IMG/VR virus record: IMGVR_UViG_3300020473_000013
Span: 124,001 to 188,000 of that record
Direction: 5' to 3' (one strand)
Length of the DNA: 64,000 nucleotides
Position numbers and translations under genes: made by a program. The notes below the pieces were generated by a model that saw only the letters and a list, made by a program, of their open reading frames with translations, was not told the DNA's origin and made no database searches. Positions 3,822-57,768 of this stretch are shown in pieces (the first letter of the stretch is position 1; every line of letters begins with the position of its first letter).

Positions 3822-4532
3822 ATGGCTAAGAAGGCACCTTCCGCCGAGAAGAAGGCAAAGTCTACCAAGAAGGCTGCGAAGACAGGCGGCAAGGTCAAGA
3901 AGTCCAAGCTGCCGAAGAAGCTCACGGTCAAAGCGCTCGCAGACGCCAGCGCTGAGTACAACCCGCGTGTCATCAGCGCCCGTCAGCTCAAGGGTCTCCA
4001 GACCTCATACGAGACGTTCGGTGACCTGAGTGGTATCGTGCTCAACCGTGCTACCGACACCATCGTGTCTGGTCACCAGCGCCTCAAGACACTGAAAGGC
4101 AAGAAGACTCGTGTGGTGACCGAGGACCACAAGGATAAGTACGGCACTGTCGAAGTCGGACATATCGAGGTCCTCGAGGATGGTACGCTCACCAAGATTC
4201 CTTTCCGCGTCGTAAACTGGTCCGACGACAAGGCGGAGAAGGCAGCCAACATCGCGGCGAACGCCCACGGCGGGGACTTCGACAACAACAAGCTGGGTAA
4301 GCTGTTGGAGGAGCTGGAACCTACTGAGGCCTTTGAGATCGAGCAGCTCGGTTTGGACCCGTTAACCATTCGCTCGCTCGGTGGTGGAGCCTCCGCTGCT
4401 GAGGAACCCAAGACAAGTAAGAAGGACAAGCCTGTCGAGGGCGAGCAGGATGATGACGATTCGTTCGGCGAGTACGACGAGAACTCCTTCGAGTTTGAAC
4501 ACCAGTGCCCTCGCTGCTCCTTCAAGTGGTGA
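3822..4532 (+). CDS. ParB/Srx-like domain protein with Lys-rich N-terminus and C-terminal CxxC ribbon
   Basis: YNPRVIS...FGDLSGIVLN...IVSGHQRL ParB-N signature; HQCPRCSFKW at the C-terminus. Confidence 0.8.
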   Translation: MAKKAPSAEKKAKSTKKAAKTGGKVKKSKLPKKLTVKALADASAEYNPRVISARQLKGLQTSYETFGDLSGIVLNRATDTIVSGHQRLKTLKGKKTRVVTEDHKDKYGTVEVGHIEVLEDGTLTKIPFRVVNWSDDKAEKAANIAANAHGGDFDNNKLGKLLEELEPTEAFEIEQLGLDPLTIRSLGGGASAAEEPKTSKKDKPVEGEQDDDDSFGEYDENSFEFEHQCPRCSFKW

Positions 4533-4537
4533 TCTGA

Positions 4538-5734
4538 ATGGCAAAGAAGAAGACGAAGACCAACGAGAAGTTTGTACCGAAGGACCCTACATCCAAGGTC
4601 GCCAAGATCGACGGCAGGGAAGTCGAGTACAACGGCGTGACGCTGGCTGATGATACCGGCGTCTCCCGCAATCATCTGGCTATCGCCGAGCCGTTGGAAG
4701 GCGGCAAGAGCCTCGTGCCTACGATGGCCAAGATCAATAAGAAGCGCAAGGACTTCACGTCCGTCAGCTTCTTTGCGGGTTGCGGTGGTGCATCCGTCGG
4801 CATGAAGATGGCAGGCTTCAACGTACTGCTATCTAACGAGTTCATTCCCGCGGCTCAGGACACTTATCAGCTCAATCATCCTGGCACCATCCTGAACAAG
4901 TCCGACATTCGTGAACTCGACCCTAAGGCCTTGCTCAAGGAGCTTGGCCTTAAGAAAGGCGAGCTGGATCACATGGACATGAGCCCTCCTTGCAAAGGCT
5001 TCTCCGCTGCAGGTGTTCAGGAAGACGGCTGGAACAAGGAGGTCCTTTACTCCGACGGTGTGAAACAGCGCGTGGATGACCTATTCGATCAAGGCATCCG
5101 GATGCTCAAGGGTATGAAGCCCAAGACGTTTACCGCCGAGAACGTGTCTGGTCTGGTGCGCGGCGTGTCCCGAGGTCTGTTCGCTGAGACCATAGAGGAC
5201 TTCAAGAAGGCCGGCTATCGCGTCAAGGCTGCGATGATCGAGCCCGTGAAGCTCGGCGTCCCGCAGACACGCGCCCGCCTCATCATCATTGGTGTGCGCA
5301 ATGACCTGAAGATGGACCCTGTATTTCCGAAGCCGTTGAAAGGACGGCCCGTTACCGTGCAGGACGTTCTCCCTCACATCGCATACCTCAAGACGAGCCT
5401 CAAGTCTCGCCTGACCTACGTTCCTGCTGACCGCCCTAGCCCCACGATCGTGGCATCCGATTTTGATACAGGGGAGAACGCGCGGTTCAGTTGCGGAGGC
5501 TGGGTAGAAGACGATCAAGGCCGCCGTCGTAAATACACGTTGCCCGAACTCCGCCGCGTCATGTGTTTTCCTGACGACTTCAAGTTGTCTGGGACTCCGC
5601 GCCAGCAATGGGAGCGTCTGGGCCGTTCACATGTCCCTCTCCAGGTTTACCACCTCAGCAAGGCAATCCGGGAGAACGTTCTGGAGCCCTACTATGACAG
5701 CAAGGGAGCGGATTACACCGACACGATTAAGTGA
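4538..5734 (+). CDS. DNA cytosine-C5 methyltransferase homologue, predicted carboxymethyltransferase
   Basis: Motif I FAGCGG, IV SPPC, VI ENV, VIII QTRAR, IX RRVMCFPD; motif X reads LGRSH (Asn->Arg). Confidence 0.9.
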   Translation: MAKKKTKTNEKFVPKDPTSKVAKIDGREVEYNGVTLADDTGVSRNHLAIAEPLEGGKSLVPTMAKINKKRKDFTSVSFFAGCGGASVGMKMAGFNVLLSNEFIPAAQDTYQLNHPGTILNKSDIRELDPKALLKELGLKKGELDHMDMSPPCKGFSAAGVQEDGWNKEVLYSDGVKQRVDDLFDQGIRMLKGMKPKTFTAENVSGLVRGVSRGLFAETIEDFKKAGYRVKAAMIEPVKLGVPQTRARLIIIGVRNDLKMDPVFPKPLKGRPVTVQDVLPHIAYLKTSLKSRLTYVPADRPSPTIVASDFDTGENARFSCGGWVEDDQGRRRKYTLPELRRVMCFPDDFKLSGTPRQQWERLGRSHVPLQVYHLSKAIRENVLEPYYDSKGADYTDTIK

Positions 5735-5738
5735 CCGC

Positions 5739-6011
5739 ATGACCGACCAAGACCTACACCAACTGAGGGAGCACATCCGTTCCCTTGAAAACCGCCTCCT
5801 CATAATGGGCTTGGCTCGCGAGGAGGCAGTTCAGGAATACCGGGTCCGTGTATCCTCCGAGTTGTCCATTGATCCGGACAGCCCTGGCTTAGCCTGCATG
5901 GAGCGAAGCATGTTCGTCTCCCGAGGCCAGCAGTTGGGGCTGTCCGACTCCGTATTGGAGAGCATGGCTGATGCACTGTTCCCTGCCACCGTCAGACCTG
6001 ACTGTAAATAA
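5739..6011 (+). CDS. hypothetical protein within the modification cluster
   Basis: 90 aa ORF filling the gap between the MTase and cmoA. Confidence 0.55.
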   Translation: MTDQDLHQLREHIRSLENRLLIMGLAREEAVQEYRVRVSSELSIDPDSPGLACMERSMFVSRGQQLGLSDSVLESMADALFPATVRPDCK

Positions 6012-6036: not shown

Positions 6037-6756
6037 ATGTACGAAGAAGATCGCGTTACCCCGAAGGATAACTGGGAGTTCGACGAGGACGTTGCCAAGT
6101 GCTTCGACAATATGCTGGAGCGCAGTATTCCCATGTATCAGGAAATGCGCAAGCTGTGTCATAAGCTCGGACGCAATTTCGTCCAGCCTCACAATTCCAT
6201 CATCGACCTCGGCGCTAGCCGCGGTGAAGCGCTCCGCCCTTTCATCGAGGACGACACTGCCAACAAATTCATGGCCGTGGAAATCTCCGAGCCTATGCGC
6301 ACTGTCATGCAGGACTTGTACCGGCATAATCCCAAGGTACGTATCTCCGATATGGACCTGCGCAAGCTCGACCAGAACGTGGGCACCCTCAGCTCTCATT
6401 CCATCTCTCTGGCTATGTCCATCCTGACTATCCAGTTCACTCCTATCGAGTATCGCCAGCAGATCATGCAGGCTATCTACGACATGTTGGAGCCCGGTGG
6501 AGCTTTCCTGTTTGTCGAGAAGGTGATCGGCAACACGGCGTCTCTGGACCGCATGTTTGTTCAGGAATACTACGACATGAAGAACCAGAACGGTTACAGC
6601 TACGAGGACATCCAACGCAAGCGCAGTTCCCTCGAAGGTGTTCTGGTTCCCGTGACAGCTAGCTGGAACGAGGACATGTTGAAGAACGCTGGTTTCCGTC
6701 AGGTGGACTGTTTCTACCGCAATCTCAATTTCGCTGGCTGGCTCGCAATCAAGTAA
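6037..6756 (+). CDS. cmoA: carboxy-S-adenosyl-L-methionine synthase (CmoA family)
   Basis: WEFDEDVAKCFDNMLERSIPMY, DLGASRG, LTIQF, VEKV, QRKRSSLEGV (conserved CmoA Arg), NLNFAGWLAIK all match CmoA; GGAGG RBS. Confidence 0.9.
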   Translation: MYEEDRVTPKDNWEFDEDVAKCFDNMLERSIPMYQEMRKLCHKLGRNFVQPHNSIIDLGASRGEALRPFIEDDTANKFMAVEISEPMRTVMQDLYRHNPKVRISDMDLRKLDQNVGTLSSHSISLAMSILTIQFTPIEYRQQIMQAIYDMLEPGGAFLFVEKVIGNTASLDRMFVQEYYDMKNQNGYSYEDIQRKRSSLEGVLVPVTASWNEDMLKNAGFRQVDCFYRNLNFAGWLAIK

Positions 6757-6764
6757 GGTGCATC

Positions 6765-7583
6765 ATGACTCTCCAAGTACGGGAACACATCACCAACACC
6801 GTAGCCAAGACGGGTGACCGATCCTGCTCGGTGCTGATGTCCTCTGGGATCGACAGCCACAGCGTCCTGTTCTCGTGCTTGGACGCTGGTCTGAAACCTG
6901 TAATCACCTCATTCACCTTGGATGACCGCGAGTCTCGCGACTTCCGAGCAGCGCGCCACGCTGCGGCCTACTTCGATCTGGAGTTCAGGCCCGTAGTTCT
7001 CAGCACGGACCTCACCAAGTTGAAGAAGCGCGTTCTCCAGATGGCGCGCCTTGGAGTTAAGGGTAAGACCGCCTTCGAGTGTCTCTGGCCTATGTTTACC
7101 GCGTTCTCTGCAATCAAGGAGGACGTGGTGTTTAGCGGTTACGGCGCCGACGCCTATTTCGCCTTGAGCAAGCGCGGCACCATGCACTATAAGGACGACG
7201 TGAGCAAGTACGCTCTGGAGGCTTTCGAGAAGTACAAGGAGCCCGACTCCCAGCTCAACGTCCTCAAGGCGTTCGCTGCCAAACGCGGTATCACCTACGC
7301 TCCTCCGTGGTTGAACAAGCACATCACCCGCCAGGTTCGGGAGCGTGTCTTCACCTGGGACGAGTTGAATCGGCCCAAGCAAAAGAATCCCGTCCGTGAG
7401 CAGTACGCCGAGTACCTCGCGGGCTGCATGGTGTACAATCATGTAAACTACCAGCTAGGCGACAGCGGAATCTCCGAGTTATTCACCAAACTACTGGACG
7501 ATCCTGTCTGGAACGCTGCGGGCTACAAATCAACCACGGGCATTTTTAACTCCGTGGTTCGAGGGGAGATCACTCAGGTATGA
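6765..7583 (+). CDS. asparagine-synthetase-like PP-loop ATP-dependent amide ligase lacking the glutaminase domain
   Basis: PP-loop SSGIDS and SGYGAD motif of the AsnB synthetase domain; 272 aa; no N-terminal Cys GATase. Confidence 0.8.
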   Translation: MTLQVREHITNTVAKTGDRSCSVLMSSGIDSHSVLFSCLDAGLKPVITSFTLDDRESRDFRAARHAAAYFDLEFRPVVLSTDLTKLKKRVLQMARLGVKGKTAFECLWPMFTAFSAIKEDVVFSGYGADAYFALSKRGTMHYKDDVSKYALEAFEKYKEPDSQLNVLKAFAAKRGITYAPPWLNKHITRQVRERVFTWDELNRPKQKNPVREQYAEYLAGCMVYNHVNYQLGDSGISELFTKLLDDPVWNAAGYKSTTGIFNSVVRGEITQV

Positions 7584-8032
7584 ATCCGTTTACCCATCTA
7601 CGCGCTCAGGTGAAAGCCAATCTGGAGCGCGAAGCGAAGCTGTCTCCTGCAGAGAGACGGCAGCATCAATGGCAGTTCTTCACGACCGTAGGCGAAGTCA
7701 CCTACATCGTAGGCAAAGGCGGTGCCAACACCATGTTCTATATGGTTGGCCAGAACGGTGAACGACACATGTGCAGCCCCAAGGACATGCTGGACATTAT
7801 CAGCTCCTGGGGCCAGTCACGGTTCGCTGTGTACGCTGTCTGTAAGAAGCCCAGCAAGTTCAGCCACGGTCCTTTCCAATCCGAGGAAGAGGCACTCGCC
7901 GTAAAGGATGCGCCGAAAGGAAGCTACATCGTTGGCATCACACCCGAGAACAAGGTGATCAGACTCCACAAGCTCAAGAGCGGCCTGATGGATGACAAGT
8001 GGGTCCCGTTCAAGCCGAAGAAGAAAGGATAG
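7580..8032 (+). CDS. hypothetical protein
   Basis: 150 aa; ATGA overlap with the upstream gene. Confidence 0.7.
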   Translation: MNPFTHLRAQVKANLEREAKLSPAERRQHQWQFFTTVGEVTYIVGKGGANTMFYMVGQNGERHMCSPKDMLDIISSWGQSRFAVYAVCKKPSKFSHGPFQSEEEALAVKDAPKGSYIVGITPENKVIRLHKLKSGLMDDKWVPFKPKKKG

Positions 8033-28110: not shown

Positions 28111-31100
28111 ATGGGTACTCAATTTGAGGAAGACCTCAAAAAGGTCCATCAGACGTTGAACGAGGGAGAGGCCGGTGCTGGTCCTATCGCTCCTGCCGTC
28201 GCTACGTCCGAAGGCTTCAAGCCTTCCGTGTTCAGTTCTCTCGCTGCCGCCTCCGATGAAGATGGCGCTGGCGACTCCATTATTTCCTCGCAGCTCGTTC
28301 GTGTGAACCTTCCCAAGGAACGCATGTCAGCTTACGAGGACTTCTTCTTTCCGAAGCGCACGGCTCAGTTCCTGCCGCTGATCGACGAACTCGCTACCAT
28401 CTCAGCCCGCACCAGTGGGTTTTTCGCGCTTCTGCGGTTCTGCCTGGCTAATGCTCGTCGTCTGGCCGCTCTCGACAAGACGGAGCGTGCTGCTGCCGTC
28501 AATCGCGAGGCTGAGCGCATCCTGAAGAACGTCTCCAGCTCCGACAAGTCGGATAGCGTGGGTGAGTTCCTCGACATCATGAACGCGGGTAACAGCCACG
28601 TCATCGTTCCGTCGGATCGCTATGATAGCGGACTGGACATCCAGTTCATCGGCTCTCCTGCTGCTCCTTCCTCTGCCGTTTCCACCAAGGTTCCGACGCT
28701 CAGCCTCCCGTACGGTGAGTACAGCGTGATCGACCTGCTACCTCGCGGCAAGGCCAACGACTCTCGGTACGAGTACGAGTATCTGGAAGCCTACGCGACC
28801 GAGTTGTCGCAAGCGTGTGTCAAGGTCGGCGAGGAAGTCCTCAAGCTGATCCTTGGGGAACAGGCCACCTCCTATACCGACGCCGGCAAGCGTGTGGTTC
28901 GGACATTACCTCTGAACTTCGACTTCCAGCAGATCAACCACATGTTCTTCGACCACACGGGTATCATCCTGACTGTGGACTTCATGGAGAACATCAACTC
29001 CGACGTGGCCAAGCACTTCGGAGAGTTCCTGAGTGCGAACGTCATCCGTACGCCCAAGAACAACCTGATCCGCGAAGTCCAGAATCGCATGGATCGGAAT
29101 GCACGTGAGGCCGAGGACCCGGATAACCCTGCGCCAGTCGCTCCCGACTTCATCGAGAAGATCATGACTCGGGAAGGCATGGCGCTGAGCCAGGTGCTGT
29201 CGTTCTCCTTCACCATCAACCTGCCGTCCGACATCGCGCACTACATCACGCAGGCTGAGGAAGGTGAGCGTCCGTCCCTCCTGTCGCTTCACAACTGGGC
29301 TAGCATCTGGACCCGCCGTCACATGCGCCGCAAGGGTGCGCGTACTCAGGGCGGTCGCATCAAACGCTCCGAAATGCCCAAGTTCGTGCTGCCTCTGTCC
29401 AAGGCGCAGCGTGCGACCGAGGTGCGTACCGAGAACGGCTTCCACGTCGAACCTGGTAAGGGCGACGACCACAACGTCTTCATCGCTCCGTCTGGTGCGC
29501 TCCAGTTCGCTCCGCCTACCGAGGCTAAGGACGCGATCAAGGAGAACCTGGACAACTACGAGCGGGACATGGAGGAGTACCTGAACTTCTGCTTCGAGCA
29601 TGGGTTCCCGGTACAGAAAGGCGCTACTCTCCCGCGCGAGGTTGTGGTTGATCGTGCTGACCCTGCTCTTGCCAAGCAGTTCACCGAGCTGCACAACAAG
29701 GTCCACCGGTACAACGGCAAGCTCCTGTCCTACGACTGGGATTACAACAACATCATCACCGCGAACGCTCAGAACCCGACCTCGATCGTGGCTAACGACA
29801 TGGTCGGTGCGGCCACTGTGGACTCGCTCACCTTGGCTGATTATCTGGGCTTCAACTTCGCCGAGGAAGGTGAGCAGCCTATCCGTAAAGGCTTTGGCGA
29901 CTCTCTGGTGCTGCTGACCAACACCACGCTGGAGAAAGATGGCCGTGCCTCTGACGTGGTGGGCACTACCTCAGACCCGACCATATTCCTGAAGTCAGGC
30001 GGTATCGCTTCCGACCTCCTTAGCTTCTACGCCTACTGTTGGGCTCAGGAGCGTGTACCTGGTCTGCAAGACCTCGTCACCGAAGCGATGAAAGAACTCG
30101 GCCTCAGCGAGCTTGGGACCTTCGACGCTACCCAGCTCTCTGGCATGGTCAGCCCGGGTGGTAGTGTCGCCGAGTCTTACACCAACACCGTCACCGATAT
30201 TCAGCGGTTCATCACCAGTGCGCTCAACCAGACAATGCTGCACTGTGCTGGCGGTCCTATGTTCCGTCAGATGATCGCGGATGAGAACGAGGGTGCCAGC
30301 TACGGGGAAATCGAGGAGCAGATGCGCGAGCATCCGCACTACTTCAACCCTGTCAATAGTCCTGCGGCCGACTTCGGCAACCTCTACAACTACGTCGGCG
30401 GCATGGTCTTCAAGCTGGCAATGGAGCACCTAACCAAGGTCGAGCTGAAGGACCTGTTCAGCATCGAGCCTCCGGTTCAGGCCAACGCCTACAACACGCT
30501 GAGCAAGCCGAACTTCTCATCCGTGTCCAAGCGTATCATGCCTCTCGCGGTCCTGTTCAGCAAGTACGTGCCGAACGCCGAGCAGATTCTTCGCGAAGCC
30601 GATGAAATGATGGAGGCCAATCGGGCTGACGACTCACTGGACGAGAGCGACATTCGCGTATCCGGTGCTGTGGACGGCGCCCAGATGTTCCCGCACCAAG
30701 TGCGCGCACATCAGAGTCTCCGTAAGCGTCCCAAGTTCTCCATCCTCGACATCGCACCTGGCGGCGGTAAGACTACGCTCGGTGTTACCGACATTGGTTC
30801 GATGGTCACCGAACTCAATGAGATCGGCGGCAAGAACGTCAAGCCCATCATCCTGTGTCCGGACGGCCTGATTAAGAACTGGGTCGATGACATGAAAATC
30901 TTTACCGGGACCAAGTGGAACATGATCCCGGTGAACAAGCACGTCATCAATCGGTGGGGCTATGAGAAGCTGGAGGAACTGATCCGTGAGGCGCCGGTGA
31001 ATACCATCGTCGTTTGTGGATTCAACTTCCTGACCTCTCGGCGCGAGACTGTGGTGTTCGGCACCCATAGTTCTCGCGTGTCCAACAACCTTGAGTTCAT

Positions 31101-34100
31101 GAAGCGGTTTGCCTTCGATTATATCTGCATCGACGAATCGCACAAGCTCAAGAATAAGAACTCTCAACGCCACAAGACCATCAAGCAGCTCACCACTGCT
31201 TCCCACGTGCGGTTCATCCGCCTCGCCACTGGTACGCTCATCAGCAACCGTGTGGATGACATCGTGGGTCAAGCCAGCCTGTGCAACGGCCACATCTTCC
31301 GCGACGGTGAAGTGTCCAACGCCTCAGTCGCTGATTCTGTGGAGCGCCGCATCGAAATGAACGGCGATGAGGTTCCTGTCTGGGAAGTGGACAGCCCTCA
31401 GCGTGCTCGCCAGAAGCTCAGCCGTTACGCCTCGGTCATCACGATGAAGAAGAAGGAGTGGGCCTTCATGTTGCCTTCTCCTATCGAGACTTTCATCGCG
31501 GTGCCTATGGTCCCGTCCGATGACGGTAACGCTAGTCCCGAGGACATTCAGCTCGGCGAAATGCACAAGCAGCTCTACGATGCGGTGTTGCAGGAGTCAG
31601 TCGAGGAACTGGAGCAGCTTCTCAAGAAGGCCAAGTCTCGTCGCAGCGCGGGTGAGGATGACGAGGACGAAGGCGGCGAGGATGAAGGTGCCAGCGAAGG
31701 TAACATGGAGATGGAGGAGAACGAAGAACTCTCCATGCTCAATGCTGCTGAGCTCCGTCCTTATCTGGCTCGTATCGAGCGCCTCGTTACCAACCCGATG
31801 GCCGATCCTCTGGCTCCGGACATCTTCGGTGCTGCCGGTGTTCAGGACTACCACTCCACCAAGGCGCGCTACATCGCCAATCGGATCGACAAGCACTTCA
31901 ATCCTGAGAAGTGGAGTAAGGACAAGGTCTACAAGGAGTACACGCTCCTCGAACACAACGGCAAGCTGTACCTCAGCCGTAAGCTCGACAAGTCCACGTC
32001 TACTCCTGGCGACCTTCCCGAGACGACTCGCGGCAAGTCTCCTGAGGAGGATACGGAGACCTGGAAGGAAGAACCTGAAGGCAAGGTCATCGTCTTCTGC
32101 CGTTACACCAACAGCGTCAATGGTGTGTTCGCCGCGCTTCCCGAGCACTACAAGCGTATTGCCGTGAAGTTCACTGGCGAAGAAGACGACAAGTGGGGCA
32201 ATCTGGATTCGTTCCTGAACGATCCCAAGACCAAGATTCTGGTCGCCAACGAAATGGGTATCGCGGAAGGTCACAACATGCAGTTGGCCTCTCGCATCAT
32301 CCGTGTCGAAAGTCCGTGGGCGCCCGGCGATCTGGACCAGTCGTCCTCGCGTATCTTCCGTCCTGATCCAAGCGCTCAGAAGGACATGGTGAAGAACGGT
32401 AAGCCCGGCGAGCTGTCGCGTGAAGCGATCTTCCTCGATTGGATTCTCTGCGATTCTACGATGGAGGTTGCCAAACAGGCTCGACTCATCGCCAAAATCT
32501 TCAACAAGGCGCGGTTCGACGAGGCGGAGAACGAGACCTACAACGACGTCCTCAGCGAGTTTGAGCTGGACGAGATTCGGATGAGCCTCGACACTCTGCG
32601 TTCGCGTGCGTCACTGGAAGACTTTAGCGAGTACGTGGAAGCCTACGCTACCCTGAACGGGATTCAGCGTGAGGAGTTCCATGAAATGCGGGTCAACATG
32701 GATCACACCATGAAGGACCTGGAAGCGCAGCCTGAGGTTCCTGGGTCTGCGAAAATCCAGACTCCTTTCGTGTCGAACCAGAAGCCGGAAGACCCGGAAG
32801 GGCTACAGCTCGTCTCTCTGCGTAACATGCTCCGCAACGAGCAGCACCGTGAATTGGCGCAGGACCCGACGAAGCTGGAAGGCATGCCTGTCGTCACCGA
32901 CCTCGGTAAAGGCCGTATCGCTAAGGTGCGCGTGCGCTATCTCAAGCGTGCTGTCCTTGACGAGGAAGGACACCCGGTCAAGACTCGCGGTGGCTCCATT
33001 AAGAAGGAGGACGTGCTGGACGGTCAAGGACGTAAGGTCGTCGATCCTGACAACCCGATCGTCAGCTTCGTGGTGAAGCAGGCAGGCACTAACGAGATTC
33101 TTCCTTCGTTCAGTGACACAGGTGTGGTGTTCATGCCTACCAAGCTGGATGCCAAGACTGCGAAGCGCGACTTCCACGTTAACAACCTCCGTACCACCAA
33201 GACAGAGGAGCGAAAAGCCCAACGTCAGGCGGAGTCTGCCCGCGAGGCCGAACGTAAGCGTGAGCGCACTGCTGAGGAGGAACGTCGCAAGGAAGAGGAA
33301 CGTGAGCTGGTACGCGAGGAGCGTCGTCGTCGCAAGATGAAGAAGGAGGCGGAAGCTCGCAAGGAAGCCGCGAAGGACGGACGTAAGCGCCGCAAGAACC
33401 TGGAGGAAGGCCAGCCGGTCAACAAAGGGATCAAGCGCGTTAAGGACGTGCCTCCTATTAAGCGGGGCCGCATGGATGAGCAGGACGAGGACATGTCCAT
33501 CACCTTACATCCTGCGTACTTCCACGGGTACCTTACTCTTGAACTCAAGGGCGATGCTGCGGATGCCAAGCGCCTCAAGAAGTTCGGCTTTAAGCCTACA
33601 GGCCCGTACGCCTACGTGACGGCGGACCGGTACAGCCGCTTCGATAAGGTTCTTGATTACCTTGAGGATCACTTCCAGCTCTCCAACGCTAGTATAGGGC
33701 GTCTGGATGAGATTCAGGATGCGTTCGAGGAAGGACCCAAAGGCGTCTACCGCATGGAGCTCGCTCCGCAACGGTCACTGCCGTACTTCTTCGCAACTCG
33801 GAAGCGGCCCGTCCAAAAGCGTAACGAGATTCGCCCGTACCCAATCGTCATGCCTAATGAGCTGCAGGTAGCCGTCGATCTCAAGACGAACCCTGCAATT
33901 CGCAAGCATGTCGGGAAAGCGGTGCCGGGCGCAGCGACCAAGTGGCAGCAAAGCGATGGTCACCTCCTGTACTTCGCCTCCGCCAAGAAGGACCTGCGTG
34001 CTAAGGTGCGCGACCTCAAGAAGGCCGGGTTCACTATCGAGAACGAGGCAGAACTCAGTAAGGAGATAACCAGCATTCGTTTCCGCGCTTCTTCCAACAA

Positions 34101-34107
34101 GAAATAG
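28111..34107 (+). CDS. giant SNF2/SWI2-family helicase/translocase (1998 aa)
   Basis: FPHQ, DIAPGGGKT, IDESH, LATGT, EGHNMQ, W..GDLDQSSSRIFR. Confidence 0.88.
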   Translation: MGTQFEEDLKKVHQTLNEGEAGAGPIAPAVATSEGFKPSVFSSLAAASDEDGAGDSIISSQLVRVNLPKERMSAYEDFFFPKRTAQFLPLIDELATISARTSGFFALLRFCLANARRLAALDKTERAAAVNREAERILKNVSSSDKSDSVGEFLDIMNAGNSHVIVPSDRYDSGLDIQFIGSPAAPSSAVSTKVPTLSLPYGEYSVIDLLPRGKANDSRYEYEYLEAYATELSQACVKVGEEVLKLILGEQATSYTDAGKRVVRTLPLNFDFQQINHMFFDHTGIILTVDFMENINSDVAKHFGEFLSANVIRTPKNNLIREVQNRMDRNAREAEDPDNPAPVAPDFIEKIMTREGMALSQVLSFSFTINLPSDIAHYITQAEEGERPSLLSLHNWASIWTRRHMRRKGARTQGGRIKRSEMPKFVLPLSKAQRATEVRTENGFHVEPGKGDDHNVFIAPSGALQFAPPTEAKDAIKENLDNYERDMEEYLNFCFEHGFPVQKGATLPREVVVDRADPALAKQFTELHNKVHRYNGKLLSYDWDYNNIITANAQNPTSIVANDMVGAATVDSLTLADYLGFNFAEEGEQPIRKGFGDSLVLLTNTTLEKDGRASDVVGTTSDPTIFLKSGGIASDLLSFYAYCWAQERVPGLQDLVTEAMKELGLSELGTFDATQLSGMVSPGGSVAESYTNTVTDIQRFITSALNQTMLHCAGGPMFRQMIADENEGASYGEIEEQMREHPHYFNPVNSPAADFGNLYNYVGGMVFKLAMEHLTKVELKDLFSIEPPVQANAYNTLSKPNFSSVSKRIMPLAVLFSKYVPNAEQILREADEMMEANRADDSLDESDIRVSGAVDGAQMFPHQVRAHQSLRKRPKFSILDIAPGGGKTTLGVTDIGSMVTELNEIGGKNVKPIILCPDGLIKNWVDDMKIFTGTKWNMIPVNKHVINRWGYEKLEELIREAPVNTIVVCGFNFLTSRRETVVFGTHSSRVSNNLEFMKRFAFDYICIDESHKLKNKNSQRHKTIKQLTTASHVRFIRLATGTLISNRVDDIVGQASLCNGHIFRDGEVSNASVADSVERRIEMNGDEVPVWEVDSPQRARQKLSRYASVITMKKKEWAFMLPSPIETFIAVPMVPSDDGNASPEDIQLGEMHKQLYDAVLQESVEELEQLLKKAKSRRSAGEDDEDEGGEDEGASEGNMEMEENEELSMLNAAELRPYLARIERLVTNPMADPLAPDIFGAAGVQDYHSTKARYIANRIDKHFNPEKWSKDKVYKEYTLLEHNGKLYLSRKLDKSTSTPGDLPETTRGKSPEEDTETWKEEPEGKVIVFCRYTNSVNGVFAALPEHYKRIAVKFTGEEDDKWGNLDSFLNDPKTKILVANEMGIAEGHNMQLASRIIRVESPWAPGDLDQSSSRIFRPDPSAQKDMVKNGKPGELSREAIFLDWILCDSTMEVAKQARLIAKIFNKARFDEAENETYNDVLSEFELDEIRMSLDTLRSRASLEDFSEYVEAYATLNGIQREEFHEMRVNMDHTMKDLEAQPEVPGSAKIQTPFVSNQKPEDPEGLQLVSLRNMLRNEQHRELAQDPTKLEGMPVVTDLGKGRIAKVRVRYLKRAVLDEEGHPVKTRGGSIKKEDVLDGQGRKVVDPDNPIVSFVVKQAGTNEILPSFSDTGVVFMPTKLDAKTAKRDFHVNNLRTTKTEERKAQRQAESAREAERKRERTAEEERRKEEERELVREERRRRKMKKEAEARKEAAKDGRKRRKNLEEGQPVNKGIKRVKDVPPIKRGRMDEQDEDMSITLHPAYFHGYLTLELKGDAADAKRLKKFGFKPTGPYAYVTADRYSRFDKVLDYLEDHFQLSNASIGRLDEIQDAFEEGPKGVYRMELAPQRSLPYFFATRKRPVQKRNEIRPYPIVMPNELQVAVDLKTNPAIRKHVGKAVPGAATKWQQSDGHLLYFASAKKDLRAKVRDLKKAGFTIENEAELSKEITSIRFRASSNKK

Positions 34108-52618: not shown

Positions 52619-53257
52619 ATGGAACTTCGACTGCAAAATCTCATCGAGGACTTCGAGCGCGTATCCAACGTCCGGAACCTCGACGAGAACAACCCGATCG
52701 TGATGCGGCTCAGTCACCCGACCAACGCCTCGGTGCATGTCATCGTGTGCGCGCTGACCGAGCCCGAAACTCTGGTGCTCCCGCTGAACGTCACGTGGTT
52801 CGTGTACGATCCGCTGCACAAGTTCTACCGCCAGGCTCTCCGCCGTAAGAGCAAGGACTCCGATCCTACAGGTGAGTTCTCCCATACGTGGGAGCGCGTC
52901 GAAACCTACGATGAAGTGTTCGTCGATCAGTATTATGACGCTGACGATACGGACAAGCTCAGCGATAACTCAGGTCCTGACGTTGCTCAGCCTTCCGTGC
53001 TTGGCATCGCGCGTCTGTCCGTTGAAGCCGAGGTAGCGTCCAATCCTGTCGTCGTTGCCGAAGGTGACCCTCGCCTGAGCGATGCACGCGAACCTCTGGC
53101 CCACACGCACCCGGAACGTCCCGCTCGACAGCTTCGCACTTCCGAAGGTGTTGTCACCATCGAAGGTTCCGCCGAGCCTGTGACTGGTGCCGTCCTCGTA
53201 GCAACGGGACCCAACACCGCTGAGTGGCGCAAGCTCCGCACTTCCGACATCCGCTGA
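52619..53257 (+). CDS. virion fibre-anchor protein, paralogue of the N-terminus of the next gene
   Basis: LPLNVTW..DP....YR.ALRR and PVVV...D.R.S..R.PL.H.HP shared with 53272..57768. Confidence 0.7.
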   Translation: MELRLQNLIEDFERVSNVRNLDENNPIVMRLSHPTNASVHVIVCALTEPETLVLPLNVTWFVYDPLHKFYRQALRRKSKDSDPTGEFSHTWERVETYDEVFVDQYYDADDTDKLSDNSGPDVAQPSVLGIARLSVEAEVASNPVVVAEGDPRLSDAREPLAHTHPERPARQLRTSEGVVTIEGSAEPVTGAVLVATGPNTAEWRKLRTSDIR

Positions 53258-53271
53258 TAAGGGAGCATCCC

Positions 53272-56200
53272 ATGAATCGACTGGAACAATTCGTCGATCG
53301 GTTGATGGCGGTTGCCGATAAGCGTAACCTCGCTTACGAAAACCCCGTCACCATTATGATCGACGTAGGCCAGGAGCAGTTTTACGTGGTGGTCAGCCAT
53401 GCTGAACCTAACCACGTGACTCTGCCTCTAAACGTCACATGGATCGTAGCCGATCCCGAAAGCCCGAACTACCGCAAGGCCCTGCGCCGTGCTTCCGCTC
53501 TACCGTTCGATGGACTGCGTAACACCTGGGCGGAGCTTCGTACCTACGAAGACTTCACCGAGGAACTCCAGTTCTGGGACCTGAGCGCCACCTTCCAGTT
53601 CGGTGAGATTCAGGTTCCCGGCGTCAAGGAGGCCACTCCTACCCGTCGCGGTCTGTTCTCTCTGAATCGCGAAGCTGGTGACCCTGACGATCCTGTCGTG
53701 GTAGGTGACAACGACGAGCGCATGTCCAATCCGCGCCAGCCGCTCCCTCACCAACATCCCCTGCTTCCGAGCACCATGCTGGCAGGCAGCACAGGCATCA
53801 ACGAGTTCTACGTCATCATCAGCGAAGGAGGTAGTCCCGCCGAAGGTCAGATTCTCTGTTTGACCGAGCCTGGGGATGAAGAAGGTGAATGGAACGGTAT
53901 CTGGCGCTACCCGACTGCGGCTGACATCGTGTATGACGGTCCGACGGTTCAAGAAATCGTTATCAACGGCCCCGCCGACGATCAAGTCGAAGAGGGTACT
54001 CCTGTTCCGTTCACGGCTACCGCCGTGTTTACCGACGGTTCAACCATCGAGTCTATCGCTGCGGAGTGGGAGATCATCGCCAATACTGGTGCAGGTACGA
54101 TCAGCACCAGCACAGGTGTCTTCACCTCAGCGGACGTGTCAGGTGATCAGGTCGTCCGTATCCGAGCCTCCTGGGTTCACGAGGAGAGCGGCGAGCAGCA
54201 TCAGGGTACCTACGACCTTACCGTGATCGACACCACGGTCGTGGCCGTGCTGGAGCGTATTGAACTCTCGGGTGTTGATTCCATCGACGAAGGTGGCAAC
54301 ACTTCCCAGTTCACCGTCACCGCGTTCTACGATGACGGCTCCAGCCGCGGTGTTACGCCCACCACCTTCACTTCGAGCAACCTGTCCGCTGGTTCCTTGA
54401 ACAGCAGTACCGGTATGTTCACGAGTGCGGTGGATGTGGTGAACAACCAGACCACAACCCTGAACGCGACCTACACCGAGAACGGCGTAACCGTGTCCGA
54501 TGCTCTCGACCTCACCGTAGTGGACACCACGGTGTACCCGGAGAGCGCGGTCATTCAGGGCCCGGTCGTTGTCGCCGAGAACACCGAGGAAACATACGTC
54601 CTCGTCGTCACGTTTACCGACCAGACCTCCAGCCAGGTCGCGGTGTCCGACTGGGCTATCGACAATGCTAGCGCAGGTGTTATCGGGTCTTCCGACGGCG
54701 TACTTCAGGCCCCGACCAACCTCGACGCGGACGAGATCGCTACGATCAGCGCTAGCTTCACGTCCAATGGGCGTACCGTGAACGCCAGTTACGAAATCAC
54801 CGTGACTGACGAGACCGTGTACCCTGTCAATGCTACCGTCGTTGGTCCGAACCAGATCGACGAAGGTGAAGTGGTTACCTACCAACTCGAAGTCGAGTTC
54901 AGCGACGGTACCACCAGCTTCGTCTCCGTGTCCGACTGGTCTCATGATACTGCGTCCGCAGGTAGCATCGGTCCTTCCAGTGGTGAGTTCACCGCCTCGG
55001 AGGTTACCGCGAACACCGACACTGTCATCAGTGCTAGCTACACTCAGTCTGGTGACACCGTGTCGGACACTCTGACGCTGACCGTGCTCGATACCACGAA
55101 CTACCCGGTGTCTGCTCGCATTGTCGGCAACGCTACCATGGGCGAAGGCTCCACTCAGGACCTGGACCTCGAGGTCACCTACCAGGACAACACAACAGCT
55201 ATGGTTGTCGCCGATTCCTGGGTGAGCTCCGACGACACGCTACTCCCTGTATCAGCCATCGGTGAGGTCGTGGCTAAGGATGGTCTTCGCACTGACAGCT
55301 TTGCTACCATCACCGCCAACTACTCCGAGAACGGCGTCGACCTCGCACCGACTCTCACGATCACTGTGACTGACGATACCCTGTACCCGACAGGTGCTCA
55401 GATTCTCGGTCCTATCGTGGTCAACGAAGGTACCACTGTCGGTTACTCTCTCGAAGTCACCTACGAGGGTGGTGGGAAGCAGGTGGAGCCGGTCAATACC
55501 TTCGCAATCGACAACGCCTCAGCCGGCACCATTACTAACGATGGTCGTCTGTCTGCGCCTGCCGATGTGACCTCCGATGTTGCGACGCAAGTTAGCGCCA
55601 GCTTCACTCTCGACGGCACCACCGTCAGCGCTACTCTCGACATCACCGTGACGGACGACACCGTCTATCCTGCCAGCGCTCAGATTCTGGGTCCTGTTAG
55701 CATCGACGAGGAGACCGTTCACACCTACGAGCTGGAGGTTACCTACACAGATGCTACGAAGGGTGTCGTGACCGTAAGCGACTGGGACAGCAGCAACACC
55801 GCTGCCGCCACCATCGATACGTCCACGGGTCAGCTCACCGCGCTCAGCCTTGCGGAAGACGCGATGACCACCATCAGCGCCAGCTTCACTGAGAACGGCA
55901 CGACCGTTGGAGACACCATGGACATCACTGTCCGTGACGTTACCAACTACCCCGTCAGCGCCCAGATTCTCGGCGTTGCATCCGTTCCAGAGAACGGTAC
56001 CGCCACCTATGAACTGGAAGTTACGTTCAAGGACAGCACCGTTCAGAAGATGCCTGTTACCAACTGGGCTTCTTCCAACACCAACGCTGGTGTCATCAAC
56101 GCAACCACGGGCGCGTTCCAAGCGCGTGCTAACGTGACCGCTGACGTGAACACCACCATCAGCGCCAGCTACACTGCCTTTGGGCAGACTGTTAGCGACA

Positions 56201-57768
56201 CGCATCTGGTGACCGTGACCGACGAAACTGCGTACCCAGTGTCCGCAACCCTCAACGGTCCTGTCACTGTGGACGAGAACACCGACGCCCAGTACACTCT
56301 GCGCGTAGTGTTCGACGACAGCTCCGAGCGTGACGTGCCTGCCACTGACTGGGCTGTGGACAACCCTGCCGCAGGCTCCATCGTGGCAGACACTGGTGTG
56401 TTCAGTGCTGCCGAGAACGGTACTGGTGCCAACATCACTACCGTCGTGTCCGCTTCGTGGAATGTGGATGGCGTTGAAGTGTCCGACCAGAAGACTATCG
56501 GCGTTGTCGATACGACCGTGTACCTCGAATCCGCTGAGGTGCAGGGTGCTGGCTCTGTGGACGAGGGTGCTTCCGAGACGTACCAGCTTCGCGTCTTCTA
56601 CACCGATGGTTCCGACCGCGTGGTATCCGTCGAAGACTGGGGCATCGACAGCGGCGGCGCGTTCGCTACTATCGACCCGGTCACCGGCGTGCTCACCGCG
56701 GACGCCAACTTCATCGGCGACAAGACTGTGACCATCAGTGCGTCGTTCACCGAAGGCGGTATTACCGTCGGCGACAACCTGCTGATCAACCTGGCTGACG
56801 TGATCCTGCGTCCCATCAGCCTCGACATCAGCGGTCAGAACGAAATCGACGAGGGACAGTCCGACACCTACAGCGCAGTGGTGACTTACGATAACGGTTC
56901 CACCGCGTCTGTCTCCCTGACTGATTGGGCTACGGATAACGCTGCCGCTTCCATCGACGCCACAACTGGGGAGCTGACTGCGAATCAGGTGGACGCAGAT
57001 ACCGACGTGATCATCACCGGTTCCTACACGGAGAACGGTGCAACCGCGAACGGTTCGTTCACCATGCGCGTCATCGACGTGTACGCTGTCTCCGCCGCTA
57101 TCACTGGTCCGACGTCCGTACTGGAAGGCACCACCGCTCAGTACGAAATGAACGTGACTTTCAGCGACAGTTCCGTGGATACTCGCGCTATCAGCGACTG
57201 GGCTACCTCGGATGAGGCTGTGGCGACCATCGACGCTTCCACCGGCGAACTGACCGCCGTGATGCTCGATGCTGATACTCCTGTCACGATCAGTGGTTCG
57301 TATACCGAGAACGGCTACACGGTTAATGCGACGCTTGACATCACCGTGACCGACACTCCGCCTGTGACGCAGGCTCTGCCGAAGTGGGGCTACGCTCCGT
57401 ATGCTGGTCCTGATCTGACGGCCGCAGGCGACACCGTTCAGTCGTTCCTAGACGCTTTGCCTAGCGACATGCCGAGCGAGAGCAACGGCGAGGAGTTCAC
57501 CTACGACCTTCCGGATGGGAACACTTATGCGTACTTCGCGCATCCGAAGTCGCTGGGTCTCGCCACGTTCACCGACACGGCTAACAACTTCGCCGGTTCG
57601 TGGGACGGTGCTTCGTGGCAGAGCGATCTGTCCAACATGGACAACACCGGTCCGATCGAGGTGACCTACGACGATGGTTCTGGTCCGGCCCAGTGGTACG
57701 TATATCGTACTGATTGGCCTGGACCCAGCAACAATCCGTCCACCTTCCGGGTCGATTACGCGGGCTAA
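53272..57768 (+). CDS. large Ig-like (Big_2-type) repeat virion fibre protein
   Basis: 1498 aa; 12 tandem ~95-aa repeats starting YPxSAxIxGPxxVxE; T/V/D/S-rich. Confidence 0.85.
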   Translation: MNRLEQFVDRLMAVADKRNLAYENPVTIMIDVGQEQFYVVVSHAEPNHVTLPLNVTWIVADPESPNYRKALRRASALPFDGLRNTWAELRTYEDFTEELQFWDLSATFQFGEIQVPGVKEATPTRRGLFSLNREAGDPDDPVVVGDNDERMSNPRQPLPHQHPLLPSTMLAGSTGINEFYVIISEGGSPAEGQILCLTEPGDEEGEWNGIWRYPTAADIVYDGPTVQEIVINGPADDQVEEGTPVPFTATAVFTDGSTIESIAAEWEIIANTGAGTISTSTGVFTSADVSGDQVVRIRASWVHEESGEQHQGTYDLTVIDTTVVAVLERIELSGVDSIDEGGNTSQFTVTAFYDDGSSRGVTPTTFTSSNLSAGSLNSSTGMFTSAVDVVNNQTTTLNATYTENGVTVSDALDLTVVDTTVYPESAVIQGPVVVAENTEETYVLVVTFTDQTSSQVAVSDWAIDNASAGVIGSSDGVLQAPTNLDADEIATISASFTSNGRTVNASYEITVTDETVYPVNATVVGPNQIDEGEVVTYQLEVEFSDGTTSFVSVSDWSHDTASAGSIGPSSGEFTASEVTANTDTVISASYTQSGDTVSDTLTLTVLDTTNYPVSARIVGNATMGEGSTQDLDLEVTYQDNTTAMVVADSWVSSDDTLLPVSAIGEVVAKDGLRTDSFATITANYSENGVDLAPTLTITVTDDTLYPTGAQILGPIVVNEGTTVGYSLEVTYEGGGKQVEPVNTFAIDNASAGTITNDGRLSAPADVTSDVATQVSASFTLDGTTVSATLDITVTDDTVYPASAQILGPVSIDEETVHTYELEVTYTDATKGVVTVSDWDSSNTAAATIDTSTGQLTALSLAEDAMTTISASFTENGTTVGDTMDITVRDVTNYPVSAQILGVASVPENGTATYELEVTFKDSTVQKMPVTNWASSNTNAGVINATTGAFQARANVTADVNTTISASYTAFGQTVSDTHLVTVTDETAYPVSATLNGPVTVDENTDAQYTLRVVFDDSSERDVPATDWAVDNPAAGSIVADTGVFSAAENGTGANITTVVSASWNVDGVEVSDQKTIGVVDTTVYLESAEVQGAGSVDEGASETYQLRVFYTDGSDRVVSVEDWGIDSGGAFATIDPVTGVLTADANFIGDKTVTISASFTEGGITVGDNLLINLADVILRPISLDISGQNEIDEGQSDTYSAVVTYDNGSTASVSLTDWATDNAAASIDATTGELTANQVDADTDVIITGSYTENGATANGSFTMRVIDVYAVSAAITGPTSVLEGTTAQYEMNVTFSDSSVDTRAISDWATSDEAVATIDASTGELTAVMLDADTPVTISGSYTENGYTVNATLDITVTDTPPVTQALPKWGYAPYAGPDLTAAGDTVQSFLDALPSDMPSESNGEEFTYDLPDGNTYAYFAHPKSLGLATFTDTANNFAGSWDGASWQSDLSNMDNTGPIEVTYDDGSGPAQWYVYRTDWPGPSNNPSTFRVDYAG

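What the first reader, a model, noticed from the sequence alone, without database searches (positions are those of the whole stretch)
5609..5638. Natural Asn->Arg swap in MTase motif X, the position that converts C5-MTases into carboxymethyltransferases
Seen: motif X reads WERLGRSHVP (Arg363, codon 5624-5626) where C5-MTases have G-N-[AS]-V; the catalytic PC, ENV and QxRxR motifs are intact. Established: placing a basic residue at this Asn in M.MpeI (N374K) and E. coli Dcm (N436K) gives engineered enzymes that use Cx-SAM, the basic side chain pairing with the cofactor carboxylate. Inference: this is a naturally evolved CxMTase. It is residue-level evidence independent of the adjacent cmoA gene.
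Basis: partly seen in the sequence, partly recalled or inferred. Interest (0 to 1): 0.88.

Follow-up and report, generated by a model that had tools for sequence, protein, structure and literature searches.

The report
Phage DNA cytosine carboxymethyltransferase (CmoX)
The Asn-to-Arg change is real and marks this jumbo-phage enzyme as a DNA cytosine carboxymethyltransferase, but that family (CmoX, working with CmoA and CmoY) was described with a crystal structure in December 2025, so this is a new member and not a discovery.

Summary
ORF 4538-5734 (+, 398 aa) is an intact C5-cytosine methyltransferase-fold protein. Residues 358-367 read WERLGRSHVP, and Arg363 (codon 5624-5626) sits where M.HhaI has Asn304.

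The best solved-structure match by sequence (E 1.9e-48) and by fold (TM 0.76) is 8YF3. That entry is SpCmoX of Synechococcus phage S-B43, a natural DNA cytosine C5-carboxymethyltransferase whose Arg350 binds the Cx-SAM carboxylate (Yang et al., Nat Commun 2025, PMC12783734). Window Arg363 aligns with Arg350, and all nine residues I checked from that paper (five cofactor or catalytic residues plus the SPPC motif) are conserved.

The gene order matches the published system: ParB-like, CmoX, CmoA, CmoY (a short asparagine-synthase-like amide ligase). Pseudomonas jumbo phage PaBG has the same genes in nearly the same order.

Across relatives:
- 118 of the 120 closest homologues carry Arg.
- All 81 further loci whose MTase was picked or fetched without reference to motif X carry Arg, and 68 have cmoA nearby.
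- The two natural Asn variants lie among Arg-type proteins on the tree, and neither has cmoA on its contig.

Still unknown for this lineage: the target sequence, the amine that CmoY attaches, and the role of a conserved 150-aa neighbour.

Verdict: new member of a known kind, with modest interest.

The parts
3822..4532 (+). ParB-like protein (236 aa), ending 5 bp before CmoX
   Evidence: phrog_620 ParB-like partition protein, E 1.8e-31. 52% identical to PaBG_00176 'ParB-like domain nuclease'. No direct Pfam hit. ParBc proteins are reported next to CmoX.
4538..5734 (+). CmoX homologue: DNA cytosine C5-carboxymethyltransferase (398 aa)
   Evidence: PF00145 E 5.5e-45. 8YF3 (SpCmoX) E 1.9e-48 by sequence. 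AF2 model pLDDT 88, with 8YF3 the best PDB fold match at E 2.4e-25, TM 0.76. 51% identical to the PaBG methylase and 36-37% to SpCmoX.
4982..4993 (+). Motif IV, S149-P-P-C152 (catalytic Cys)
   Evidence: Aligns with SpCmoX S95-P96-P97-C98. Invariant in 30 homologues.
5138..5146 (+). Motif VI, E201-N-V
   Evidence: Invariant in alignment A5.
5264..5278 (+). Motif VIII, Q243-T-R-A-R247
   Evidence: Q243, R245 and R247 are invariant.
5609..5638 (+). Motif X, WERLGRSHVP (aa 358-367)
   Evidence: E359, R360 and G362 are invariant and R363 is nearly invariant in A5.
5624..5626 (+). Arg363 codon (CGT), predicted to bind the Cx-SAM carboxylate
   Evidence: Aligned to SpCmoX R350 and M.HhaI N304. The role of R350 was shown in 8YF3.
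6037..6756 (+). CmoA, Cx-SAM synthase (239 aa from the ATG at 6037, which has a GAGGA 7 nt upstream; the ORF is open from 5971)
   Evidence: TIGR00740 CmoA E 2.2e-42, 145 bits, below the equivalog cut-off of 193. Full-length match to E. coli CmoA 4GEK, E 2e-27. 29% identical to the assayed SpCmoA. Start context.
6765..7583 (+). CmoY-like ATP-dependent amide ligase (272 aa), asparagine-synthase C-domain only, no glutaminase domain
   Evidence: PF00733 E 1.9e-10. 31.6% identical over the full length to SpCmoY, the glycine ligase (E 2e-30), and 37.6% to PaBG_00180. Alignment A7.
6840..6857 (+). PP-loop S26-S-G-I-D-S31 of CmoY (ATP pyrophosphatase motif)
   Evidence: S26, G28 and S31 are invariant among six CmoY homologues including SpCmoY.
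7580..8032 (+). Conserved 150-aa protein of unknown function; its start overlaps the CmoY stop by 4 bp
   Evidence: phrog_23597, E 2.4e-46. 46% identical to PaBG_00179, which lies between cmoA and cmoY. Found near the cluster in PaBG-like and Erwinia jumbo phages. AF2 pLDDT 90, with no significant PDB fold match. Membership of the system is inferred from linkage only.

Best explanation
ORF 4538-5734 encodes a CmoX-type DNA cytosine C5-carboxymethyltransferase of a PaBG-like jumbo phage. The neighbouring CmoA converts SAM plus prephenate into carboxy-SAM (Cx-SAM). CmoX flips out a target cytosine and Cys152 attacks C6. The C5 carbanion then takes the carboxymethyl group of Cx-SAM, whose carboxylate is held by Arg363 in place of the usual motif-X Asn, giving 5-carboxymethylcytosine in phage DNA. 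The adjacent CmoY, a PP-loop amide ligase, then adenylates that carboxylate and joins an amine to it. The amine is glycine in the characterised S-B43 system and is unknown here. The hypermodified cytosine would shield the genome from host nucleases. Shown here: the residue, its positional equivalence, conservation of the cofactor-contact residues, the fold match, the gene neighbourhood and the co-occurrence statistics. Shown by others for a homologue 36-37% identical: the chemistry, the Arg-carboxylate contact and restriction protection. Inferred: that this protein does the same, its target sequence and its final product.
For: Position: R363 aligns with SpCmoX R350 and HhaI N304. All nine checked SpCmoX residues (F25, E47, F48, D69, S95, P96, P97, C98, R350) are identical in the window protein. 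Structure: 8YF3, 'DNA cytosine C5-carboxymethyltransferase in complex with Cx-SAM', is the top hit by sequence (E 1.9e-48) and by fold (E 2.4e-25, TM 0.76). Published chemistry: SpCmoX makes 5cxmC, accepts only Cx-SAM, and R350 contacts the carboxymethyl group. Neighbourhood: ParB-like, CmoX, CmoA, CmoY and the 150-aa gene are all on the + strand with gaps of 5, 302, 8 and -4 bp. Phage PaBG has the same genes in nearly the same order. Association tests: every C5-MTase found within 10 kb in 80 viral loci picked by CmoA alone has Arg. All 81 loci picked or fetched by MTase features outside motif X have Arg, with cmoA in 68 and cmoY in 50. The two Asn variants among the 120 nearest homologues have no cmoA on their contigs (12.5 kb and 3 kb), while an Arg-type relative in a Verrucosispora prophage has the ParB, GATase-CmoY, MTase and CmoA-like genes together. 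One Asn variant sits inside an Arg-type clade with SH-aLRT support of 100.
Against: There is no biochemical result for this protein, and identity to the characterised enzyme is only 36-37%. The CmoA scores below NCBIfam's equivalog cut-off (145 against 193 bits). The target-recognition region differs from SpCmoX by several insertions and deletions, so GC specificity cannot be assumed. Arg is not the only route: the C5-MTase next to cmoA-cmoY in Staphylococcus phage vB-SscS-F1 appears to have Gly at this position, read by eye from its C-terminus and not from an alignment. The Asn controls number only two, one of them on a 3-kb contig.
Confidence: 0.9

Rival explanations
1. It is an ordinary SAM-dependent C5-cytosine methyltransferase, the Asn-to-Arg change is tolerated, and the neighbouring cmoA serves another purpose such as phage tRNA modification or SAM depletion.
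For: The fold and all catalytic motifs are those of C5-MTases. PaBG carries tRNA genes about 4 kb upstream of its cluster.
Against: SpCmoX, with the same Arg and the same pocket residues, accepts Cx-SAM only and not SAM. Arg is conserved in 118 of 120 homologues and goes with cmoA. No tRNA genes lie in this 64-kb window. No CmoB-type tRNA transferase showed up among the cluster genes or the larger ORFs scanned, though the scan was not exhaustive.
Confidence: 0.04
2. It is a CmoX-family protein, but its substrate or product differs from the S-B43 paradigm. Examples would be a different recognition sequence, action on single-stranded or replicating DNA only, or a product further processed by CmoY and the 150-aa protein into a base that is not 5-glycylcarboxymethylcytosine.
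For: The target-recognition region is shorter than and diverged from SpCmoX. CmoY is only 31.6% identical to SpCmoY. The paper itself finds ligase clusters with different pocket residues and predicts other amines. A conserved 150-aa gene not mentioned in the paper is linked to the cluster.
Against: CmoY aligns over its full length with SpCmoY and shares its domain make-up with no glutaminase domain, so glycine or another amino acid remains the simplest guess. This is a refinement of the main explanation and not a contradiction of it.
Confidence: 0.3
3. It is an inactive or decaying gene copy whose motif-X change is a lesion.
For: SpCmoX R350N is dead with both cofactors, which shows the pocket is sensitive to this position.
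Against: The ORF is intact and all catalytic motifs are present. The model is confident, with pLDDT 88. The Arg is the conserved state of a large clade.
Confidence: 0.02

Closest known systems
SpCmoX, DNA cytosine C5-carboxymethyltransferase of Synechococcus phage S-B43 (PDB 8YF3; Yang et al., Nat Commun 2025, PMC12783734)
   Same: Same fold. SPPC, ENV and QxRxR motifs. Arg at the HhaI-N304 position inside an ER[LV]GR motif. All named Cx-SAM contacts are conserved. Encoded beside cmoA and a short asparagine-synthase-like ligase.
   Different: Only 36-37% identical. Has a roughly 55-residue N-terminal extension and a shorter, diverged target-recognition region. Gene order is ParB, X, A, Y rather than A, Y, X. 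The host phage is a PaBG-like jumbo phage, not a T4-like cyanophage. Target sequence and activity are untested.
Pseudomonas phage PaBG gp177 'DNA cytosine methylase' and its cluster PaBG_00176-00182
   Same: 51% identical, with ERLGRS at motif X. Same neighbours: ParB-like, MTase, CmoA, 150-aa protein, asparagine synthase, Zn peptidase, clamp loader.
   Different: In PaBG the 150-aa gene lies between cmoA and cmoY, and an extra 203-aa gene follows cmoY. PaBG is annotated as an ordinary methylase and tRNA methyltransferase. I found no paper reporting its DNA chemistry.
Engineered CxMTases: M.MpeI N374K and M.CviPI variants (Kohli laboratory)
   Same: A cationic residue at the motif-X Asn lets a C5-MTase use Cx-SAM to make 5cxmC.
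   Different: Those are laboratory point mutants with Lys in otherwise SAM-using enzymes. This is a natural Arg in a lineage that appears committed to Cx-SAM and is supplied by its own CmoA.
Canonical C5-cytosine DNA methyltransferases (M.HhaI, M.HaeIII; PF00145)
   Same: Same fold and catalytic mechanism through the motif IV cysteine.
   Different: Motif X reads GN[AS]V in those enzymes and GRSH here. The transferred group is predicted to be carboxymethyl, not methyl.

Membership tests
CmoX (phage DNA cytosine C5-carboxymethyltransferase) | C5-MTase fold with the SPPC catalytic motif (a selection criterion of Yang et al.) | tested here: met
   PF00145 E 5.5e-45. S149-P-P-C152 aligned to SpCmoX S95-C98.
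CmoX (phage DNA cytosine C5-carboxymethyltransferase) | Arg at the position of SpCmoX R350 / M.HhaI N304 | tested here: met
   R363 in HMMER and MAFFT alignments.
CmoX (phage DNA cytosine C5-carboxymethyltransferase) | Remaining Cx-SAM-contact residues (F25, E47, F48, D69 of SpCmoX) | tested here: met
   F79, E101, F102 and D123 are identical and invariant in 30 homologues.
CmoX (phage DNA cytosine C5-carboxymethyltransferase) | Closest solved structure is 8YF3 | tested here: met
   Sequence E 1.9e-48. Foldseek rank 1, E 2.4e-25, TM 0.76.
CmoX (phage DNA cytosine C5-carboxymethyltransferase) | Phage-encoded CmoA in the neighbourhood | tested here: met
   CmoA starts 302 bp downstream. TIGR00740 E 2.2e-42 and 4GEK E 2e-27.
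CmoX (phage DNA cytosine C5-carboxymethyltransferase) | Transfer of carboxymethyl from Cx-SAM, not SAM, to cytosine C5 | not testable with these tools
   Needs enzyme assay and LC-MS. Shown only for SpCmoX.
CmoX (phage DNA cytosine C5-carboxymethyltransferase) | GC target motif, as in SpCmoX | not testable with these tools
   The target-recognition region is diverged, with insertions and deletions. No modification data exist for this phage.
CmoA (Cx-SAM synthase) | Scores as a CmoA equivalog | tested here: inconclusive
   Best family by far, but 145 bits is below the cut-off of 193. Full-length alignment to E. coli CmoA. 29% identical to the assayed SpCmoA.
CmoY (5cxmC amide ligase) | Asparagine-synthase C-domain with PP-loop, homologous to SpCmoY, adjacent to CmoA and CmoX | tested here: met
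   PF00733 E 1.9e-10. SSGIDS loop. 31.6% identical to SpCmoY over the full length.
CmoY (5cxmC amide ligase) | Glycine as the amine substrate | not testable with these tools
   The pocket residues are shown only in a figure that is not held. Pairwise E of 2e-30 to SpCmoY is weaker than the paper's network threshold of 1e-56.
Canonical SAM-dependent C5-cytosine DNA methyltransferase | Motif X Gly-Asn-[Ala/Ser]-Val | tested here: not met
   Reads G362-R363-S364-H365.

The most novel reading that the evidence does not exclude
The PaBG-like branch of the system, to which this window belongs, may make a cytosine hypermodification other than 5-glycylcarboxymethylcytosine, at a target other than GC. 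Its CmoY is only about 32% identical to the glycine ligase. A conserved 150-aa protein (7580-8032, phrog_23597) with a confident model, no significant match to any solved fold and no mention in the published description may be a further working part of the pathway.
Probability: 0.3. Interest if true: 0.55.

Novelty: new member of a known kind. Interest (0 to 1): 0.3.

Why it matters
The sequence-only inference was chemically correct: one residue identifies enzymes that write a carboxymethyl group instead of a methyl group onto DNA. That supports using 'Arg at motif X plus cmoA' as an annotation rule. PaBG, the Erwinia, Dickeya and Yersinia jumbo phages and Moraxella phage Mcat8 are still annotated as 'cytosine methylase', 'tRNA methyltransferase' or hypothetical. 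The family itself, its structure and its spread are already published, so the window adds only a diverged member. Its practical value is that it points to cultured relatives such as PaBG on P. aeruginosa PAO1, where the final base and the target motif of this branch could be measured directly.

Tried and rejected
- Near-identical DNA search of the cluster against isolate phages found nothing. The window comes from IMG/VR contig 3300020473_000013, 224,853 bp.
- A single-protein CmoA scan of viral contigs returned only the source contig, so an alignment was needed.
- Pfam does not recognise the ParB-like protein. PHROGs and homology to PaBG do.
- CmoY has no sequence match in the PDB.
- The 150-aa protein has no significant PDB fold match. 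The best was a PURA repeat at E 0.27, and among viral models only its PaBG orthologue matched.
- The 90-aa ORF at 5739-6011 has no homologue in any fetched locus and no family hit. I treat it as doubtful.
- I could not find the window's contig, or any contig list, in the paper's held supplements.
- 'Dcm N436K' could not be verified.
- Side lead: in cmoA loci without cmoX, the C-terminal part of a 530-aa ParB_N fusion was tested for a methyltransferase fold. Pfam Methyltransf_23 gave E 0.037, and hhalign against CmoA gave 1.8% probability with motif I only. This is not established.
- A 'PC' dipeptide in that protein is not conserved, so I rejected the idea of a cryptic C5-MTase.
- Loci whose matches contain stop codons (L066, L067, L112) were left out and not read through.

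Full report
**Observation**

The + strand ORF 4538-5734 encodes 398 residues. In its frame, bases 5609-5638 read W358-E-R-L-G-R363-S-H-V-P367, and Arg363 is CGT at 5624-5626. The protein matches the C5-cytosine methylase family PF00145 (E 5.5e-45) and TIGR00675. It carries FAGCGG (motif I), SPPC (aa 149-152), ENV (aa 201-203) and QTRAR (aa 243-247).

**Positional equivalence**

HMMER alignments against solved structures put R363 opposite Asn304 of M.HhaI (FGNSV) and the matching Asn of M.HaeIII (IGNAVP). The best PDB match, at E 1.9e-48, is 8YF3. Its VGRMVPP stretch aligns residue for residue with the window's LGRSHVP, so window R363 corresponds to 8YF3 R350.

An AlphaFold2 model built on 30 homologues is confident (pLDDT 88, pTM 0.89). 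Its top Foldseek hit in the PDB is again 8YF3, titled 'DNA cytosine C5-carboxymethyltransferase in complex with Cx-SAM' (E 2.4e-25, TM 0.76). It ranks ahead of M.HaeIII and M.HhaI.

**What 8YF3 is**

Yang et al. (Nat Commun, 7 Dec 2025, PMC12783734) describe CmoX of Synechococcus phage S-B43. Their findings:
- It makes 5-carboxymethylcytosine at GC sites and accepts Cx-SAM but not SAM.
- Its Arg350, which replaces HhaI Asn304, contacts the carboxymethyl group in the crystal.
- The R350N mutant uses neither cofactor.
- The phage's CmoA makes Cx-SAM, and an asparagine-synthase-like ligase, CmoY, joins glycine to the carboxylate.
- They report 5,615 candidate CmoX sequences carrying SPPC plus this Arg, with 4,257 CmoA, 2,251 ligase and 1,660 ParBc neighbours.
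- They note that the Arg mirrors the engineered M.MpeI N374K.

All nine SpCmoX residues I checked from that paper (F25, E47, F48, D69, S95, P96, P97, C98, R350) are identical in the window protein.

**Neighbourhood**

All five cluster genes lie on the + strand.
- 3822-4532: ParB-like protein (phrog_620, E 1.8e-31; 52% identical to PaBG's ParB-like protein).
- 4538-5734: CmoX.
- 6037-6756: CmoA. Its best family is TIGR00740 at E 2.2e-42, although that is below the equivalog cut-off. It aligns over its full length with E. coli CmoA 4GEK (E 2e-27).
- 6765-7583: a 272-aa asparagine-synthase C-domain protein with an SSGIDS PP-loop and no glutaminase domain. It is 31.6% identical to the glycine ligase SpCmoY.
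- 7580-8032: a conserved 150-aa protein.

The gaps between these genes are 5, 302, 8 and -4 bp. Pseudomonas jumbo phage PaBG has the same genes in nearly the same order, with the 150-aa gene moved between cmoA and cmoY, followed by a Zn peptidase and a clamp loader as in the window. The rest of the window holds replication and virion genes of a jumbo phage. The source contig is 224,853 bp.

**Does Arg go with cmoA?**

I ran three tests.
1. *Loci picked by CmoA alone.* 80 IMG/VR loci were chosen with CmoA patterns only. Every locus that also has a C5-MTase homologue within 10 kb has Arg at this position.
2. *Loci picked by the MTase outside motif X.* 80 loci were chosen with MTase peptide patterns that lie outside motif X. 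Together with a Verrucosispora prophage, all 81 have Arg. cmoA is present in 68 and a CmoY homologue in 50. Several of the rest are truncated contigs.
3. *Nearest homologues.* Among the 120 nearest homologues in the 5.8-billion-protein search, 118 have Arg and two have Asn. The Asn proteins lie on contigs with a ParB gene but no cmoA or ligase. One contig gives 12.5 kb of context and the other only 3 kb. An Arg-type relative in the Verrucosispora prophage has the ParB, glutaminase-CmoY, MTase and CmoA-like genes together. On a maximum-likelihood tree one Asn protein is nested in an Arg clade with SH-aLRT support of 100. The other has a long branch and an uncertain place.

Among isolate phages, Moraxella Mcat8 and Synechococcus S-CRM01 have Arg with an adjacent cmoA. 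Erwinia phage Yoloswag also has Arg, with its cmoA and cmoY about 14 kb away. Four more distant MTases (Thermus, Burkholderia, Nostoc and Fusobacterium phages) have Asn. For those four, absence of cmoA rests only on the tblastn list. That search also missed Mcat8's divergent cmoA, so absence there is not proven.

**Conclusion and limits**

It is a diverged member: 36-37% identical to SpCmoX, with an N-terminal extension whose residues 20-31 are modelled with confidence, and a different target-recognition region. Nothing about activity, target motif or final base has been measured for this branch. I could not compute the Arg-to-cofactor distance. The amine used by this CmoY cannot be read from sequence with what is held.

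**Novelty**

The kind is known, and the paper's own selection rule (SPPC plus Arg) would include this protein. I rate it a new member of a known kind. The reading left open is that the PaBG-like branch makes a different amide, with the 150-aa protein as an extra component. That protein has a pLDDT-90 model with no significant match among solved structures.

Noticed in passing
window 7580-8032 (+): A 150-aa protein (phrog_23597) whose start overlaps the CmoY stop. It is conserved near the cmoA/cmoY genes in PaBG-like and Erwinia jumbo phages, and also sits beside an Asn-type MTase (L089). The AF2 model is confident (pLDDT 90), with no significant PDB fold match (best a PURA repeat, E 0.27). It is not mentioned in the CmoX paper.
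   Followed up: partly
window 5739-6011 (+): A 90-aa ORF in the 302-bp gap between CmoX and CmoA. It has no homologue in any fetched locus, not even the closest relative L009, and no family hit. It may not be a gene.
   Followed up: partly
L044:7672-9264 (IMGVR_UViG_3300042402_006309) and more than 40 other CmoA-picked loci (L010-L059): A large phage lineage has a cmoA about 50% identical to the window's, but no CmoX or CmoY homologue within 10 kb. The nearest large conserved gene upstream of cmoA (a 164-aa ORF lies between them) encodes a 530-aa ParB_N/Noc-like fusion (phrog_5475, function unknown). Its C-terminal 350 aa shows only a motif-I-like 'ILDFGAGH' stretch, and a methyltransferase fold is not established. 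It is unclear what uses Cx-SAM there. Alcaligenes phage Afa-NA1 (L005) also has cmoA with no annotated C5-MTase nearby.
   Followed up: partly
L007:7500-8507 (Staphylococcus phage vB-SscS-F1): The C5-MTase directly downstream of cmoA-cmoY belongs to a different MTase lineage. Read by eye from its C-terminus, it appears to have 'VVGGVIN' at motif X, with Gly and no Arg. This may be a second way of accommodating Cx-SAM.
   Followed up: no
L088:1058-2569 and L089:1397-2452: Two natural Asn-type proteins (ERLGNSV, ERMGNAV) lie among Arg-type CmoX relatives on the tree, on contigs without cmoA. They look like reversions to methyl transfer, which is notable because the single R350N change inactivates SpCmoX.
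   Followed up: partly
L002:4986-7094 (Erwinia phage Yoloswag gp43) and P0024, P0090, P0094, P0099: CmoX homologues of Erwinia and Yersinia jumbo phages are about 700 aa long and carry intein domains (PF14890, PF13403) inserted in the enzyme. In these phages cmoA and cmoY lie about 14-19 kb away from cmoX.
   Followed up: no
L090:7971-12276 (Verrucosispora sp. TAA-831 chromosome CP192240): A prophage in an actinobacterial genome carries ParB_N, a glutaminase-fused CmoY, an Arg-type CmoX and a CmoA-like gene next to its terminase. The system therefore also occurs in temperate actinophages.
   Followed up: no
L170:3989-5696 (Moraxella phage Mcat8): An Arg-type CmoX (ERMGRMV) is followed by a divergent CmoA. 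Both are annotated as hypothetical, in a 40-kb phage of Moraxella catarrhalis.
   Followed up: no
window 53224-57768 (+) and 28111-34107 (+): A 1514-aa tail protein whose first roughly 120 residues also match an HNH-endonuclease PHROG, and a 1998-aa helicase (phrog_21391). No tRNA genes occur in the 64-kb window, unlike the corresponding PaBG region.
   Followed up: no
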